Shown here in pieces: positions 31,658 through 62,365 of a stretch of 64,000 bases of DNA. The stretch is taken from contig NW_019217912.1 of NCBI RefSeq assembly GCF_002571385.2, forward strand, positions 443,380 to 507,379, in the 5' to 3' direction. Source of the DNA: Stylophora pistillata (Eukaryota). The notes below the pieces were generated by a model that worked only from the letters and a program-made list of their open reading frames with translations, did not search any database and had not been told where the DNA came from. The position numbers were made by a program, and so were the translations under genes. The stretch's first letter is position 1. Each line of letters starts with the position of its first letter.

Positions 31658-31853
31658 TTATTCTTCTGGCATTTCGGATCTTTTTATGTTACCAAAAGGT
31701 CCAAAACCTTGTGGCGTATTAGAGCGGCCTAGAGCCAGTCCGGCAACTGCTGGCCCACCAAGGTGGACTGAAATTCAATCAGATAAGCCCATGTAAACAT
31801 ACCGTGACATTCAATGGGGTTATAGTAATAAAGATTGCGGTAATAATAGTGAC

Positions 31854-31884
<31 letters not shown>

Positions 31885-58600: not shown

Positions 58601-61600
58601 TATAATGTACCATTGCAACTGCCAGTGCAACAGCCACTGCAATCGGCATTCCAGGTACCTTTCCAAGCACCATTTGTGGTTCCTTTTCAAGGTAGGCTGC
58701 CTAATGCATTACCAGTAGCTCCTGCCATCCCTGTCGCAGAACAGCCATCTTCTCAACAAGAGACAGAACCTGAAGTTGTTCAACCAAAACATACTTCCAT
58801 TAGTGTTAATGTTGCAGAAAAATCGACGGTTCCAAAGAAAAGGTCAAAGAAAAGAAAACATCCACTTCACAAACGACAGTTTCTACCTGTAACACAAGGA
58901 TATGTTCCCGCCTATAGAGTTCCTATTCCTTACAACAGTAATGCACCTCTGCCTGACCAAAAAAGGCCTCGAGTGTCTATCAGCGTACAAACAGCAAGAA
59001 GATCAACAGCGCAACAACCTCATAACAAGCGCCAAAGCATTTCACTTTTGACGAGATTTCCAGCTATGCAAGTTCTGCCGCAAACTTTTAAACAGAATGG
59101 CATTATGATGCCCGCTTTTAACACCTTACCAATAAATCATAAACTAAAGGCAAATGGAATGTTGATAGAAGAGTTGCAGAGAAAGAAAAAAAACAAGATT
59201 CAAGAGGCATCCAGAGGATTCAAAACAGGAAAGAGTGGCCAAATAATGCAAAAGGCGAAATTAAGCACGCCACTAAAAATGAGTTGGTATCGAAGAAGAG
59301 AAAATGCAAAGAAACGCCAATTCTTTGCTGTACCGCAATCACTTTCAGCATTTCAGCGGTATCCATTACTTCTCCGTCCAAAGCTTCACCCAAGACCTCG
59401 TGTTTCAGTAAACGTGGAAGTTTCAAAGAGAAAATTTGACTTTCAAAAGGGCAAAACACAATCAAAAAGTGTGAAAAGTAACCCGGAGGAAACAGATGGT
59501 CGTATATTTGACAAATCAGCACGAAAGAGACAGGTGTATGGAATAGATCACCTGCGGCAAATGGTGCACCTCCCGGTTGTTGGCGCACCTATCCTTACCC
59601 AAAGCCCCGTAGCCAACCAACGACCCCGTGTGTCAATTCACGTGGAAACAGCAAAGAAAAAGAATAGACTCTCACGCAAAATAGATCACCGTAAAGAAGC
59701 CGAAAGAAAAGGAAAAAGACAAATATATGGTCTATCCGAGCTGCCACACGAAGGGTTACCTGTTACCATTGCCGGTCAAGGACAAGCACTTAATCGATAT
59801 TTTCCCAACACTGAACACGATCCACACGTTTCTGTCAATGTGGAGGCCTCAAAGCGATCGGATGACGATGACGATATGATGCATAAGCGGCAGGTATTTC
59901 TCCAACCTGTCGAACAGGATCAGGAACAGGTTGCAATGACTAATGGAGATGAATCAAGTCAATCGCAGGAGCCGAATCAAGTTGGTGTCATACAATCACC
60001 CACTCCAGAAAAGGAACAACTTCACTCCTTACCGACACTAATTCAATCAAACTCAGGTGTGACCGAACCACAACAAGTGGAAGAGTTATCTCAAAGTGAA
60101 GCCTTACCTTCTCAGGCCGGTTTGAGTGAAACTGATAATGAGCGACCGCGGATTTCAGTTCATGTTGAATCATCTAAACGATCACAATATGAAAGACAAC
60201 GCAAAGTAAATGGAGTTATCGGACCAAAACTCCGCACAGCCCCTTGGAAAGGATCTAAAAGACAGCTTCAGCGACAAGACCTACAACGCGAAGATTACGA
60301 GCCCGAGCAAGAAACAACTGCTGCAAACCTAGGGGATTTACTCCAAGACCAAAGACCCCGCGTATCTGTTGATGTCAACGTCGCCAAAAAGAAACACACT
60401 GTCACAGGGACTTCCTCTTTAAAGAAGAGAAAGTACCATGGTCACACGGCCAAGGCTAGTAATCCTGCAAGGAGGCAAATCACAGTTCCGTTTGGGGGAG
60501 GAATAAATGCAATTCAAGTGGATCCCAATCAAAATACTCAGTTTATGATAGGAAAAGACCGGAACGAAAACGGGCAAGGTGCTCAAGAGGCTCCGATGTC
60601 TTTTCAGTCACAATTACAAGTCCCTGATGAGCAACAACAACAGCAGCAGCAGCCGACACAACAGATCATGCAACCAGTCGCAATATTACAACCTGATCAA
60701 CAGCAGTTTCCAGCGCTTCAACGGGCAATAATGCCAGATGCCAATACTGTGGAAGAAAAAACACGACCAAAAGTCAGCATAAGTGTTCAGACAGCAAAGT
60801 CCTCAATATCTAAAAGAAAAGATCACGCGAGGGACTCGCACTCTCTCAATGAGCCGCAAGTAAAACAAAAGTTAAGACGTCAGCTTTTTGGCACCGTCCC
60901 ACTTCTTAGTTCGCTTGGACAGTCAACATTAAATGGCGCATCTAAGGAAAATAAAAGGTCAGGTGAACCACTATCCACGCGAGAAACACCAAGTCATATT
61001 CAAGATGGAGACCGTTTATGGAAACGTCAATTGTTTAATTATCTAGGAGGTCAACAGGAACCCCAATTTGTGCCTACCCAGTCACTGCAAAGTTCCAGTG
61101 ATACTCAACAACAGGGGCAAGCGCTACAAATACAGCCCATTCAAGCAATGCCACAAGATGACGGGGCACAACTTTCATCATTCAACCTACCACAAGCCTC
61201 TCTAATACAGACAAGCGATCAAGGGTCTTTACAGACATACCCAACCCAGGTAGAAGCCCCAGGGAGCACTGAACAGGCTTCAACGACGGCTATTCAACCA
61301 GTTGAGTCCTCTAATAACCTAGACAGACCATTTCAGAGGCCTCACGTGAGCATTAATGTGCAAACTGCTAAATCTCAGGTGCCAAACCCACGTAAATTAT
61401 TCCACGATCATGCATTAAAAGATAACGCTGTGAATTCGAAACATAACACAGGGAAGGGTCAAGAAAGGAAGAAATTCAAAAGACAGCTGGATATTCTCGG
61501 TGGTGGAATGATTGAAAGGAGACGTGGCCCAAAACTGTTGGGAGGTCTTAAGAAACCAAGGCCAGAAAACTTGTTCGGTTTGGGTAACAATCTAAACAAG

Positions 61601-62365
61601 CCCGTCGAGGTGTTCACGGATCCCATTTCCAACCTAATTGGTGGTGGTGCCGGAAGAAAGAGACCGAAGCTTGGAGGAATAAGGTTAGAGAGCCCTACAG
61701 GCGTTGGAGCTCTTCCCCTTAAAGGAGCTGCCGCTGCGTTAGAGAGTGCGCTTCCTCCTGAATTGGGTGTATCCAATACACTTCAAGACAGCCCAACAGA
61801 GGCAGTTGCCCCGTTTACGCAAGAAACTAGAATTGCTAATGAGCCCTTGTTTCGTCCCCCAAGTGGAATAGCAGGACCTCAACTAGACGCACTGGAGAGA
61901 GAAGGTGATAGAGCAAATGATGTTCCATTAAATGATCTGCCTTCCATGAGACCAGCAGTACTCCCTCTGCCATCGATCAATCGGGTCTTCCTACCAAATC
62001 TAGAGGTTCCGCAGGCAGCGCCGCCGCAGGTGAATCCACTGCTTCTGACACCAAGGGTGTTACCAATTGGGCCCATACTTCCCATCGCATCACCTGCACC
62101 TTTACCACCACCAGTGGAAGAGACTGAACCCACAGAAGTTCCACAGGCCCCTCCTCGCTTCGCACCCTTGCTTCCACCCATTTTTCCCCTGCCAGGTCCT
62201 AGTATCGCACCGAATCCCGCCTTAACTGCCCCAGACAGTTTGCTACCTGAACCAGAAGATGATAAACCATCGGTGCATGTTAATGTGGAAACATCAAGAT
62301 CGAGTGTTCCTGAAACGGGTCGCCACTCTAAACAGCACGCAAACAGCCCAGCCAAACGTGGCTAG
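43628..62365 (+). CDS. Gene G: giant secreted His/Pro-repeat polyprotein with no coding introns seen (~6245 codons), one internal in-frame TAG at 56219-56221
   Basis: Signal-like MFGWSPPNILATLVLFHSLLLHLKLSPIQA from ATG 43628. ORFs 43310-56221 and 56294-62365 share a frame and read ETR*ERRKGN..RKNDIVVSRPPIIYHPPPEIY. 18 HRPP/HQPP domains, then KR-Q modules ending in RPxVS[VI]xV[EQ]. Confidence 0.85.

What the first reader, a model, noticed from the sequence alone, without database searches (positions are those of the whole stretch)
31700..62310. Conserved [KR]-S-x-[VI] module-closing motif shared by two unrelated polyproteins
Seen in F: [63 protein letters not shown]. Seen in G: FYKSHIL, YGKSKVP, FGKSHVP, YGKSTVA, FGRSEVE, YGKSNIE, FGKSSIE, FGKSAVE, FGKSKVP, FGKSNVA, FGKSKVE, FYKSKVE, FSKSHVE, FGKSHVI, FHRSHIE, TAKSSIP, SARSAIP, ASKSHIP, AEKSTVP, TAKSQVP, TSRSSVP. 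The motif sits where payload switches to charged spacer, whatever the payload. A, B and C use KKS/RKS/RRS at the same position. Inference: a monobasic cleavage or recognition code for a dedicated convertase, complementing the N-terminal KR/KK cut. Where it reads F/Y-G-K, standard carboxypeptidase plus PAM chemistry would give amidated ends.
Basis: partly seen in the sequence, partly recalled or inferred. Interest (0 to 1): 0.85.

Follow-up and report, generated by a model that had tools for sequence, protein, structure and literature searches.

The report
Module-end motif in coral stinging-cell proteins
A short signature (basic residue, serine, any residue, valine or isoleucine) really does end almost every module of several neighbouring coral genes, has been kept from corals to Hydra, and belongs to an unnamed family of secreted proteins made in developing stinging cells; it may be a cutting or recognition signal, but that is not shown.

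Summary
All 30 listed instances exist. [KR]-S-x-[VIL] is about 15-fold enriched in F and 2.3-fold in G, and it sits at the switch from low-charge payload to charged spacer.

It is an island of conservation across 12 orthologues, including Nematostella, and is weaker but present in Hydra.

F and G are not unrelated. They are a conserved head-to-head pair inside a cluster of at least six genes with the same grammar, in Stylophora pistillata:
- signal peptide
- dibasic site (KR, KR|Q or [KR]K-N)
- payload
- closing motif
- N-glycosylated variable spacer

G is one intronless gene of about 6,244 codons. The in-frame TAG is an allele of the reference, because RNA from two other studies reads CAG.

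Published data place its Nematostella orthologue NVE24290 19-fold up in developing cnidocytes. They also list two endogenous pyroGlu peptides cut at KR|Q.

Cleavage at the motif itself is unproven. In the C-terminal part (G2), half of the closings are dibasic at the same position, and K and R interchange, which favours a protease site. One low-confidence peptide spans an intact motif, which argues against it.

Amidation is not a general function, since Gly at -1 is not conserved.

The parts
43628..62365 (+). Gene G: one intronless ORF of about 6,244 codons (signal peptide MFGWSPPNILATLVLFHSLLLHLKLSPIQA), broken in this assembly by a single in-frame TAG
   Evidence: orthologues of 4,500-6,300 aa in corals, Nematostella and Hydra; RNA contigs are colinear with no joints
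56219..56221 (+). In-frame TAG of the reference. RNA contigs of two other studies read CAG (Gln) here. The NCBI model PFX26305.1 skips it with an intron that the RNA contigs do not show.
   Evidence: T>C at 56219 in X5 and X10; a 3,130-nt contig spans 54761-57890 without a gap; P0002 and P0004 read through
44840..45064 (+). Conserved N-terminal element (HFQVDDKSADLEINANSAGVKVKAKPASLQVV), identical in Nematostella. It is shared with three smaller paralogues.
46142..56680 (+). G1 region: 19 modules of about 120 aa made of heptads H-x-P-P-phi-phi-phi. Each starts [KR]-K-N-x-V-V and most end A-F-G-[KR]-S-x-[VI]. Modules are separated by K/S/E/T-rich spacers that carry N-glycosylation sequons.
56790..62365 (+). 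G2 region: strict alternation of 16 KR|Q openings and 14 closings of the form P-x-V-x-[VI]-x-V-[EQ]-T-A-[KR]. Seven closings are followed by S-x-[VI]-P and seven by a second basic residue.
44009..44020 (+). closing RSKV of the first payload (KR|QGIETPIQ...ENV-RSKV); kept as RSEV in Nematostella
47219..47230 (+). closing GK-RSKI-E
47723..47734 (+). closing FY-KSHI-L
48269..48280 (+). closing YG-KSKV-P
48866..48877 (+). closing FG-KSHV-P
49895..49906 (+). closing YG-KSTV-A
51164..51175 (+). closing FG-RSEV-E
51755..51766 (+). closing YG-KSNI-E
52166..52177 (+). closing FG-KSSI-E
52655..52666 (+). closing FG-KSAV-E
53198..53209 (+). closing FG-KSKV-P
53720..53731 (+). closing FG-KSNV-A
54260..54271 (+). 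closing FG-KSKV-E
54770..54781 (+). closing FY-KSKV-E
55568..55579 (+). closing FS-KSHV-E
56147..56158 (+). closing FG-KSHV-I
56642..56653 (+). closing FH-RSHI-E (last His/Pro module)
57302..57313 (+). G2 closing TA-KSSI-P
57569..57580 (+). G2 closing SA-RSAI-P
57992..58003 (+). G2 closing AS-KSHI-P
58820..58831 (+). G2 closing AE-KSTV-P
60797..60808 (+). G2 closing TA-KSSI-S
61370..61381 (+). G2 closing TA-KSQV-P
62297..62308 (+). G2 closing TS-RSSV-P (last payload; the Nematostella protein ends two residues after the same motif)
32951..40028 (-). Gene F, inferred model: exons 40028-38199, 35733-34119 and 33531-32951, with GT-AG introns of 2,465 and 587 nt in consistent phase, giving 1,342 aa. 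It has a signal peptide, an acidic propeptide of about 115 aa ending KGSKR, then Gly/Tyr/Trp- and Cys/Gly-rich payloads. Each payload opens after KR or KK and closes with the motif. The last exon also has a KR|Q opening.
   Evidence: splice sites read from sequence, not checked with RNA; orthologues
39477..39488 (-). F closing WY-KSSI-P
39153..39164 (-). F closing FF-RSGV-P
38940..38951 (-). F closing FY-KSKI-P
38595..38606 (-). F closing FY-RSKV-S (K in two other corals)
35653..35664 (-). F closing CG-KSKI-S
35167..35178 (-). F closing IF-RSKL-A
34744..34755 (-). F closing CC-KSNV-G
34273..34284 (-). F closing FA-RSKV-P (RNKMP and RNKVP in another coral)
33470..33481 (-). F closing VY-RSKI-P
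40029..43627 (.). Region of about 3.6 kb between the divergent starts of F and G. The same head-to-head arrangement is kept in another coral, so a shared control region is possible (inference).

Best explanation
F and G belong to a cnidarian-specific, clustered family of secreted low-complexity precursor proteins made in developing stinging cells (cnidocytes).

Each protein is a chain of payloads that are likely to aggregate. The payloads are His/Pro heptad arrays, Gly/Tyr/Trp blocks, Cys/Gly blocks or Q-initiated Pro/Ala/Val-rich peptides. They are separated by charged, N-glycosylated, fast-evolving spacers.

Every payload opens right after a dibasic site (KR, KR|Q or [KR]K-N). Every payload closes with a basic residue followed by Ser. 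That closing is either a dibasic pair or the monobasic form (aromatic or small)-[KR]-S-x-[VI]-[P/E].

My best reading is that the closing motif is the second proteolytic boundary. P1 would be K/R, P1' Ser and P3' an aliphatic residue, read by a trypsin- or convertase-like enzyme of the cnidocyst-forming secretory pathway. A carboxypeptidase would then trim the basic residue. The soluble spacers would be excised and the payloads freed to assemble into cnidocyst material.

Shown: the motif, its position, its conservation, the family, transcription, cnidocyte enrichment of the orthologue, and cutting at KR|Q with pyroGlu (low-confidence mass spectrometry).

Inferred: cutting at the motif, the enzyme, the role of the spacers and the final location of the payloads.
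For: - Enrichment and placement of the motif.
- Islands of conservation at openings and closings inside poorly conserved spacers: payload identity 0.77, spacer 0.40.
- In G2, openings and closings alternate strictly and in the same order in Oculina. The closing position holds K-S-x-[VI] in 7 modules and KK, KR or RR in the other 7, and each type is stable across species.
- K and R interchange at orthologous closings, which excludes Lys-specific chemistry.
- The Ser is 45 TCN to 1 AGY against a 65% TCN background, and 8 of 8 in Hydra. This fits one ancestral cassette under constant selection.
- There are no N-x-S/T sequons in 2,066 payload residues, against 18 in 1,011 spacer residues.
- F starts with a signal peptide and a long acidic propeptide ending KR. 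Published work calls this arrangement conserved in nematocyst proteins (PMC4321713).
- The Nematostella orthologue NVE24290 is 19.4-fold up in NvNcol-3 reporter-positive cells, rank 26. NVE24289 and NVE24294, whose ids suggest they are neighbours, are 14.9- and 18.8-fold up. A carboxypeptidase D is rank 2 and a MASP-like serine protease rank 19 (PMC6161364 Table S1).
- Two endogenous pyroGlu peptides of NVE24290 start exactly after KR (PMC11087051 supplementary file 1). That paper's main text reports that KR-x cuts are often followed by Q in Nematostella.
Against: - One of the two published peptides runs through an intact QKKSTIP and ends at the next KR. At that (divergent) closing, neither K|S nor KK was cut in the species detected.
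- Both peptides are in the authors' 'Poor' sheet. They were also selected for dibasic flanks, so the flanks are not independent evidence.
- No peptide beginning at S-x-V was found there. The authors' filter would have dropped such peptides anyway.
- The site breaks the known monobasic rule: there is no basic residue at P4, P6 or P8, and P2 is often aromatic. Nematostella peptidomics found only Rxx-R monobasic sites.
- The motif is weaker in Hydra, 8 of 13 modules.
- Cell type and processing are known only for the Nematostella orthologue of G. Nothing is known for F or for the coral.
Confidence: 0.45

Rival explanations
1. The motif is not cut. Cuts happen only at the dibasic sites, and the motif stays as the C-terminal tail of each released module. 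There it would serve as a short recognition or assembly tag, for sorting into the cnidocyst vesicle, docking to a partner, or capping the aggregation-prone block.
For: The published peptide pQILGSH...LQKKSTIPGVPSSLQRDIS carries the motif inside and ends at KR. In G2 and in the compact relative P0072, a dibasic site follows the motif within 3-20 residues, so a dibasic cut alone leaves the motif near the new C-terminus. The last payload keeps the motif even where nothing functional follows: the Nematostella protein ends ...SKSNIPK.
Against: At half the G2 closings the same position is a plain dibasic pair, which is hard to read as a binding tag. Position +2 is free, and only four positions are fixed. 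The single peptide is low-confidence and may be an intermediate.
Confidence: 0.3
2. The motif has no specific reader. It is an inherited edge of one ancestral payload-plus-spacer cassette, kept because a basic residue, a small polar residue and a beta-branched residue make a good gatekeeper between an aggregating block and a soluble linker.
For: All closings share the TCN serine codon class, which points to common descent. The family is clearly paralogous. The AlphaFold2 model of a module shows no fold that would need a cap: pLDDT 56 and no secondary structure.
Against: Spacers around the motif have drifted to 0.3-0.4 identity, while K/R, S and V/I stay at 0.85-0.95 over the coral-anemone split. 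Module-by-module orthology shows long independent maintenance. Descent alone does not explain this.
Confidence: 0.15
3. F and G are hormone or neuropeptide-type precursors whose F/Y-G-K ends give amidated bioactive peptides.
For: A-F-G-[KR] is frequent in G1: Gly at -1 in 62% of 102 instances. G-K and G-R are accepted amidation flanks in Nematostella peptidomics.
Against: Gly is absent from G2-type closings and rare (9%) in F-type closings, and it is replaced at orthologous sites. Payloads are 35-250 residues of low complexity. The orthologue is enriched in cnidocytes, while neuronal markers are depleted in the same sorted cells.
Confidence: 0.03
4. The conserved Lys is a cross-linking site (lysyl oxidase or transglutaminase type), like the Lys-Ser of collagen telopeptides.
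For: This rests on a resemblance recalled from memory only (Y-G-Y-D-E-K-S-T in the collagen alpha1(I) N-telopeptide). The proteins look like structural material.
Against: Arg replaces Lys in 25-52% of closings and at orthologous positions. Arg cannot undergo those reactions.
Confidence: 0.02

Closest known systems
Cnidocyst (nematocyst) structural protein precursors: cnidoin, minicollagens, spinalin
   Same: They have a signal peptide followed by a propeptide that ends in Lys-Arg and is removed on the way into the cnidocyst vesicle. Their mature parts are hydrophobic, Gly-, Pro-, Cys- or His-rich, disordered and self-assembling. They are restricted to Cnidaria and expressed in developing cnidocytes (PMC4321713; PMC6161364).
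   Different: The known examples have one propeptide and one mature part. Here up to about 35 payloads sit in one chain, each with its own opening and closing signal. No minicollagen cysteine-rich domain or collagen triplets were seen, and no Pfam family matches. No closing motif is described for the known proteins in the papers I read.
Cnidarian neuropeptide precursors (Nematostella peptidomics, PMC11087051)
   Same: They are multi-copy precursors cut at KR, RR or KK, often just before Gln, which becomes pyroGlu. Their inter-peptide regions are variable. Two peptides of the G orthologue were picked up by the same screen.
   Different: Neuropeptides are 3-20 residues, amidated through an invariant Gly, and neuronal. 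The payloads here are 35-250 residues, Gly is not invariant, and the orthologue is a cnidocyte gene. The C-terminal boundary K/R-S-x-V/I is not among the sites reported there.
Structural and carrier polyproteins such as profilaggrin and the nematode polyprotein allergens
   Same: They are long tandem arrays of units released by cuts in short conserved linkers (abstracts of PMC2113300 and PMC3079579 as listed).
   Different: There is no sequence relation. Those units are near-identical copies. Here the modules are individually conserved, with one-to-one orthologues in Nematostella, and they are of several unrelated compositions.
Gly/Tyr-rich peptides of nematodes (NLP/CNC type), from memory only
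   Same: GYGG-type payloads released at KR sites resemble the F payloads.
   Different: Not tested here. F payloads also include Cys/Gly and Gly/His blocks and carry the closing motif. This is a lead, not a test.

Membership tests
Cnidocyst structural protein precursor (cnidoin/minicollagen type) | Signal peptide plus propeptide ending in Lys-Arg before the mature part | tested here: met
   F: [25 protein letters not shown], then an acidic stretch of about 115 aa, then KGSKR before the first Gly/Tyr payload. G...DKR and ...PRKR|Q after the signal peptide. The feature is as described in PMC4321713. Signal peptides were judged by eye, not with a predictor.
Cnidocyst structural protein precursor (cnidoin/minicollagen type) | Expression in developing cnidocytes | tested here: inconclusive
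   Met for the Nematostella orthologue of G: NVE24290, 19.4-fold up in NvNcol-3 reporter-positive cells. Not tested for the coral genes or for F. The coral G is transcribed in polyA RNA, but the cell type is unknown.
Cnidocyst structural protein precursor (cnidoin/minicollagen type) | Minicollagen-type cysteine-rich domain or collagen triplets | tested here: not met
   No Pfam family for any part of F, G or the neighbouring genes. No Gly-X-Y runs were seen in the translations.
Cnidocyst structural protein precursor (cnidoin/minicollagen type) | Protein found in isolated cnidocysts | not tested
   No cnidocyst proteome table with these identifiers could be reached. Accessions and locus names are absent from the searchable literature.
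Classical amidated neuropeptide precursor | Short repeated peptides with invariant C-terminal Gly before the basic site | tested here: not met
   Payloads are 90-172 aa in G1. Gly at -1 is 62% in G1-type, 0% in G2-type and 9% in F-type closings, and it is replaced at orthologous sites.
Classical amidated neuropeptide precursor | Cuts at dibasic sites, with N-terminal Gln converted to pyroGlu | tested here: met
   16 of 16 G2 payloads open with [KR]R-Q. Two published pyroGlu peptides of the orthologue start after KR, both in the authors' low-confidence sheet.
Proprotein-convertase monobasic site | Basic residue at P4, P6 or P8 (Rxx-R in Nematostella) and no aromatic residue at P2 | tested here: not met
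   Positions -3, -5 and -7 relative to the K/R (that is, P4, P6 and P8) show no K or R among the commonest residues. The P2 position is F or Y in 66% of F-type closings. The Rxx-R rule comes from PMC11087051. The aromatic P2 rule is recalled from memory.
Site-1 protease (SKI-1) site [RK]-x-hydrophobic-[LTKF] | Hydrophobic residue two positions after the basic residue | tested here: not met
   Position +2 is K, S, H, N, T and never aliphatic. The consensus itself is recalled from memory.

The most novel reading that the evidence does not exclude
Cnidarians may have a dedicated monobasic processing code, (aromatic or small)-[KR]|S-x-[VI]-[P/E]. A cnidocyte-specific protease would read it. Together with KR|Q cuts, it would carve giant polyproteins into dozens of self-assembling His/Pro, Gly/Tyr and Cys/Gly pieces that build parts of the stinging organelle such as the shaft, spines, tubule or matrix. 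The glycosylated spacers would act as removable solubilisers.
Probability: 0.3. Interest if true: 0.8.

Novelty: new variant of a known kind. Interest (0 to 1): 0.62.

Why it matters
The composition of cnidocysts is only partly known, and many cnidocyte genes are taxon-restricted and unnamed. This locus contributes three things:
- a 6,000-residue, intronless, pan-cnidarian gene
- a conserved cluster of relatives
- a simple sequence grammar that predicts where the products begin and end

If the closing motif is a cut site, it defines a new protease specificity. It also predicts the mature building blocks, which can be checked directly by non-tryptic mass spectrometry and by knock-down in Nematostella or Hydra. 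If it is not cut, it is still one of the best conserved short linear motifs in these proteins and marks a binding or assembly step.

The work also corrects the public gene model: there is no intron at the stop, and the stop is an allele.

Tried and rejected
**Domain and structure searches (all blank)**
- Pfam on seven pieces of F, G and neighbours, and on six more, gave nothing.
- PDB sequence search of the conserved N-terminal element gave nothing.
- ESM Atlas with F exon 1 gave no credible hit.
- AlphaFold2 of one His/Pro module with 19 aligned modules gave pLDDT 56, pTM 0.15 and no secondary structure. There is no support for the idea that the motif is a strand docking on a folded domain, but the alignment is shallow.

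**Genome-wide search for further motif-bearing genes**
- A DNA pattern for K-S-K-[VI]-P-K gave 99 hits against 48 for the reversed control.
- The excess comes from a dispersed repeat. All 20 non-repeat hits I fetched lie in non-coding sequence with stops. This route was dropped as too noisy.
- About 25 non-repeat hits were not inspected.

**Profile of the His/Pro module against 1.84 billion proteins**
- 42 strong hits, all unnamed.
- The weak tail is unrelated Pro-rich proteins of bacteria and a fish.

**Literature searches by identifier**
- Searches for LOC100210570, LOC116618347, LOC5512467, SpisGene9031, PFX26305, A0A2B4SCY1 and NVE24290 found no paper text.
- The Stylophora cell atlas supplement and the eLife 2018 venom supplement hold no entry.
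- Searches of the Nematostella peptidomics tables for 12 further predicted G peptides or spacer starts found none.
- The other 44 mentions of NVE24290 in that file appear to lie in a pairwise identity table, judged from the one part of it that I read.

**Other ideas**
- Hydra introns do not coincide with module borders, so exon shuffling is not visible there.
- A possible link of F to the Nematostella 'spinalin-like/fibroin-like' thread protein v1g243188 (PMC9205923) could not be tested, because I hold no sequence for it.
- The Lys cross-link idea was rejected because of the K/R interchange.

**What was not submitted to search tools**
- The spliced model of F was joined only inside a local script to check frame and phase. 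The joined sequence was not sent to any search tool. Only exon 1 was searched.
- G was searched in pieces on either side of the TAG. In scripts the stop was written as X.

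
Full report
**Organism and locus**

The window is contig C129:443380-507379 of a 398-Mb assembly. The NCBI protein that matches gene G 100% over the searched region is PFX26305.1, 'hypothetical protein AWC38_SpisGene9031', from the coral Stylophora pistillata. Earlier notes of this scan had named the same organism.

**The observation**

Translation shows two genes.

- G lies on the + strand. 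It starts at Met 43628 and runs in one frame to 62365, with a single in-frame TAG at 56219-56221.
- F lies on the - strand. Its three ORF pieces can be joined through GT-AG introns in consistent phase: exons 40028-38199, 35733-34119 and 33531-32951, giving 1,342 aa. This model is inferred from sequence only.

[KR]-S-x-[VIL] occurs 28 times in G, where residue shuffles give 12.3 +/- 3.4. It occurs 9 times in F, where shuffles give 0.58. None of 2000 shuffles reaches the observed count in either case.

Placement is the stronger point.

- In F, every instance follows a Gly/Tyr/Trp or Cys/Gly block with at most 12% charged residues and precedes a Lys/Glu/Ser-rich stretch.
- In G, an HMM built from one module finds 19 His/Pro modules. 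Fifteen are closed by the strict motif within a few residues of the module end. A further one (residue 2847) lies inside its module envelope. Two carry variants, RKGKVP and RRTEVS.

**Anatomy of G**

After the signal peptide comes a region of about 830 residues. It holds a 35-residue element (HFQVDDKSADLEINANSAGVKVKAKPASLQVV) that is identical in Nematostella.

The G1 part follows. It has 19 modules of nine heptads H-x-P-P-phi-phi-phi plus a His/Tyr/Gly tail.

- Each module begins [KR]-K-N-x-V-V, with identity 0.88-0.93 across 12 orthologues.
- Most end A-F-G-[KR]-S-x-[VI]-[E/P].
- Payloads are 17% Pro, 13% His and 21% Val+Ile, and carry no N-x-S/T sequon in 2,066 residues.
- Spacers of 39-203 residues are 18% Lys and 13% Ser, carry 18 sequons in 1,011 residues, and are only 0.40 identical across orthologues, against 0.77 for payloads.

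The G2 part is a strict alternation of 16 openings [KR]R|Q and 14 closings P-x-V-x-[VI]-x-V-[EQ]-T-A-[KR]. The order is the same in Oculina. Seven closings continue S-x-[VI]-P. The other seven continue with a second basic residue (KK, KR or RR), mostly followed by Ser. Each type is stable at its orthologous position.

So the common denominator of a closing is a basic residue followed by Ser. The S-x-[VI] extension goes with the monobasic form.

**Gene model of G**

PolyA RNA-seq assemblies from several studies hold 80-95% of the sampled words of a 6-kb stretch.

Laid on 53300-59299, they show no joints. A 3,130-nt contig crosses the TAG without a gap. Two independent studies read C instead of T at 56219, giving CAG (Gln). 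Stranded raw reads put the RNA on the + strand.

Close relatives (P0002, P0004) read straight through. The intron that the NCBI model uses to avoid the stop is therefore not supported. The stop is an allele of the reference, seen also in one raw read of a 2026 run, which is weak evidence.

**F and G are not unrelated**

- The head-to-head F/G pair is kept in another coral, along with one of the Cys-rich neighbour genes.
- On the same contig, further ORFs use the same grammar:
  - 411855-413822 (-) has five to six closings after Gly/Trp/Tyr blocks. An earlier first-reader note pointed there.
  - 531326-533443 (+) has the G-type N-terminal element, His/Pro repeats, a Gly/Tyr tail, FYGRSTIPE, an acidic spacer and then KR.
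  - 536808-539479 (+) has the N-terminal element...VRTHKSDIP...HKR|QF... and ...VSRSKVP...KVKR|Q.
- A further relative lies on contig C35.
- The last exon of F has a G2-type KR|Q opening.
- The motif's Ser uses a TCN codon in 45 of 46 closings, against 65% TCN for other serines. It is 8 of 8 in Hydra and 8 of 8 in another coral. Moving between TCN and AGY needs a non-Ser intermediate. The closings therefore look like descendants of one cassette on which Ser has been selected throughout. The instances are not independent, so I give no probability.

**Depth of conservation**

G has orthologues of 4,500-6,300 residues in many corals, in Nematostella (LOC116618347) and in Hydra (LOC100210570). All are annotated as uncharacterised.

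Modules correspond one to one between Stylophora and Nematostella, and so do their closings. For example, YG-KSKV-P matches YG-KSDL-P, and FG-RSEV-E matches FG-RSSV-E.

In the 13-sequence alignment, identity at and around G1 closings is:

| Position | Identity |
|---|---|
| K/R (0) | 0.91 |
| S (+1) | 0.91 |
| +2 | 0.47 |
| V/I (+3) | 0.85 |
| Following spacer | about 0.3 |

G2 closings and KRQ openings show the same islands.

A profile of the module finds 42 strong hits among 1.84 billion representatives, all unnamed. The weak tail is unrelated Pro-rich proteins. No Pfam, PDB or Atlas match exists. AlphaFold2 gives no fold.

**What published data add**

The supplementary peptidomics table of Thiel et al. 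2024 (PMC11087051) lists a 5,017-residue precursor, NVE24290. Its printed N-terminal sequence is that of the Nematostella orthologue.

Two endogenous peptides from undigested extracts are assigned to it. Both have pyroGlu.
- KR|QILGSHTLYEELTPFNDIHPRVPIVENLQKKSTIPGVPSSLQRDIS|KR
- KR|QLLNYIPMSPLITGRYNIPLAHKTSEGSGSVGEIKRI|RR

Both stand in the authors' 'Poor_LC-MS' sheet, and candidates were selected for such flanks. This is modest evidence that the protein is cut at KR|Q. The main text states that in Nematostella KR-x cuts are often followed by Q, and that monobasic C-terminal cuts seen were of the Rxx-R kind.

The first peptide contains an uncut KKSTIP. The other 44 mentions of NVE24290 in the file appear to belong to an identity matrix, going by the one part of it that I read.

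Table S1 of Sunagar et al. 2018 (PMC6161364) compares sorted tentacle cells of an NvNcol-3 reporter line.

| Gene | Rank | Negative | Positive | Fold change |
|---|---|---|---|---|
| NVE24290 | 26 | 160 | 3,092 | 19.4 |
| NVE24294 | 29 | 191 | 3,587 | 18.8 |
| NVE24289 | 63 | 409 | 6,106 | 14.9 |
| Carboxypeptidase D | 2 | 64 | 2,839 | 44 |
| MASP-like serine protease | 19 | 89 | 1,964 | 22 |

[quoted passage not shown] F has exactly that start.

**Interpretation**

The family is best read as cnidocyte secretory precursors whose payloads are structural low-complexity material. This is well supported for G through its orthologue. It is inferred for F and the other neighbours from shared grammar and synteny.

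Four observations favour a protease site at the motif:
- A dibasic pair occupies the same position in half of the G2 closings.
- K and R interchange freely.
- The following Ser is nearly invariant.
- The downstream spacer is variable.

Against this stand the motif-spanning peptide and the mismatch with known monobasic rules.

I therefore put cleavage at or next to the motif at about 0.45. A retained recognition or assembly tag gets 0.30, and an unread gatekeeper edge 0.15.

Amidation cannot be the general purpose, because Gly at -1 is neither universal nor conserved. Lys cross-linking is excluded by Arg substitution.

**Limits**

- No coral cell-type or protein data were available.
- The F splice model is unverified by RNA.
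- Signal peptides were judged by eye.
- The mass-spectrometry evidence is weak.
- The genome-wide count of motif-bearing genes failed for technical reasons.
- The joined F model was not sent to any search tool.
- G was searched in pieces on either side of the stop.

Noticed in passing
window 56219-56221: The reference carries TAG where RNA contigs from two other studies read CAG. If homozygous, this individual would make a G protein lacking the last His/Pro module and the whole G2 part. The NCBI model hides the stop with an unsupported intron.
   Followed up: partly
window 1649-2287, 4971-5585, 10591-10857, 14349-14885, 18385-18924: ORFs encoding extreme Cys/His blocks (CCHDCCC..., CGGCGG...) and a conserved Cys-rich tail (…NDWCAPGTMCSNCKGG…HHTACGHHCLRRSSK). 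They end in [KR][KR]S. One exon has RRSDVKKR directly before CGCG. A copy of the Cys-rich tail gene is syntenic in another coral (L029:20305-20766). No Pfam match.
   Followed up: partly
window 8014-8622: ORF with a signal peptide followed by about 150 residues of Asp/Glu/Lys-rich sequence ending ...EKR. It looks like the first exon (signal plus acidic propeptide) of one of the Cys-rich genes downstream.
   Followed up: no
window 22297-24756: 819-codon ORF with about 450 residues of GGAAGG-type Gly/Ala repeats after a Cys-rich block. GC content rises to 0.52 with strong GC skew. It was not examined further.
   Followed up: no
G000:C129:411855-413822 (-), 416314-417273 (+), 531326-533443 (+), 536808-539479 (+); G000:C35:824961-825833 (-): Further members of the same family outside the window. 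They share the closing motif, KR or KR|Q openings, and in three cases the HFQVDDK...LQVV element right after the signal peptide. The cluster seems to end near 539.5 kb, where an LRR-type ORF begins.
   Followed up: partly
L030:33231-34937 (Hydra): The ORF just downstream of the Hydra G orthologue carries G2-type closings (PRIHVAIETEKREKIP and PEVHVHISTEKSRIAKP). The Hydra gene model may therefore be split, or the G2 part may be a separate gene there.
   Followed up: no
genome-wide: The 18-mer AAATCGAAAATCCCCAAA occurs about 45 times, often as inverted pairs 3-13 kb apart on the same contig. This suggests terminal repeats of a dispersed mobile element.
   Followed up: no
window 32298-32720 (-): A 140-aa ORF resembling the tail of a reverse-transcriptase-type retroelement protein lies just beyond the last F exon. 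A similar piece lies next to the C35 family member.
   Followed up: no
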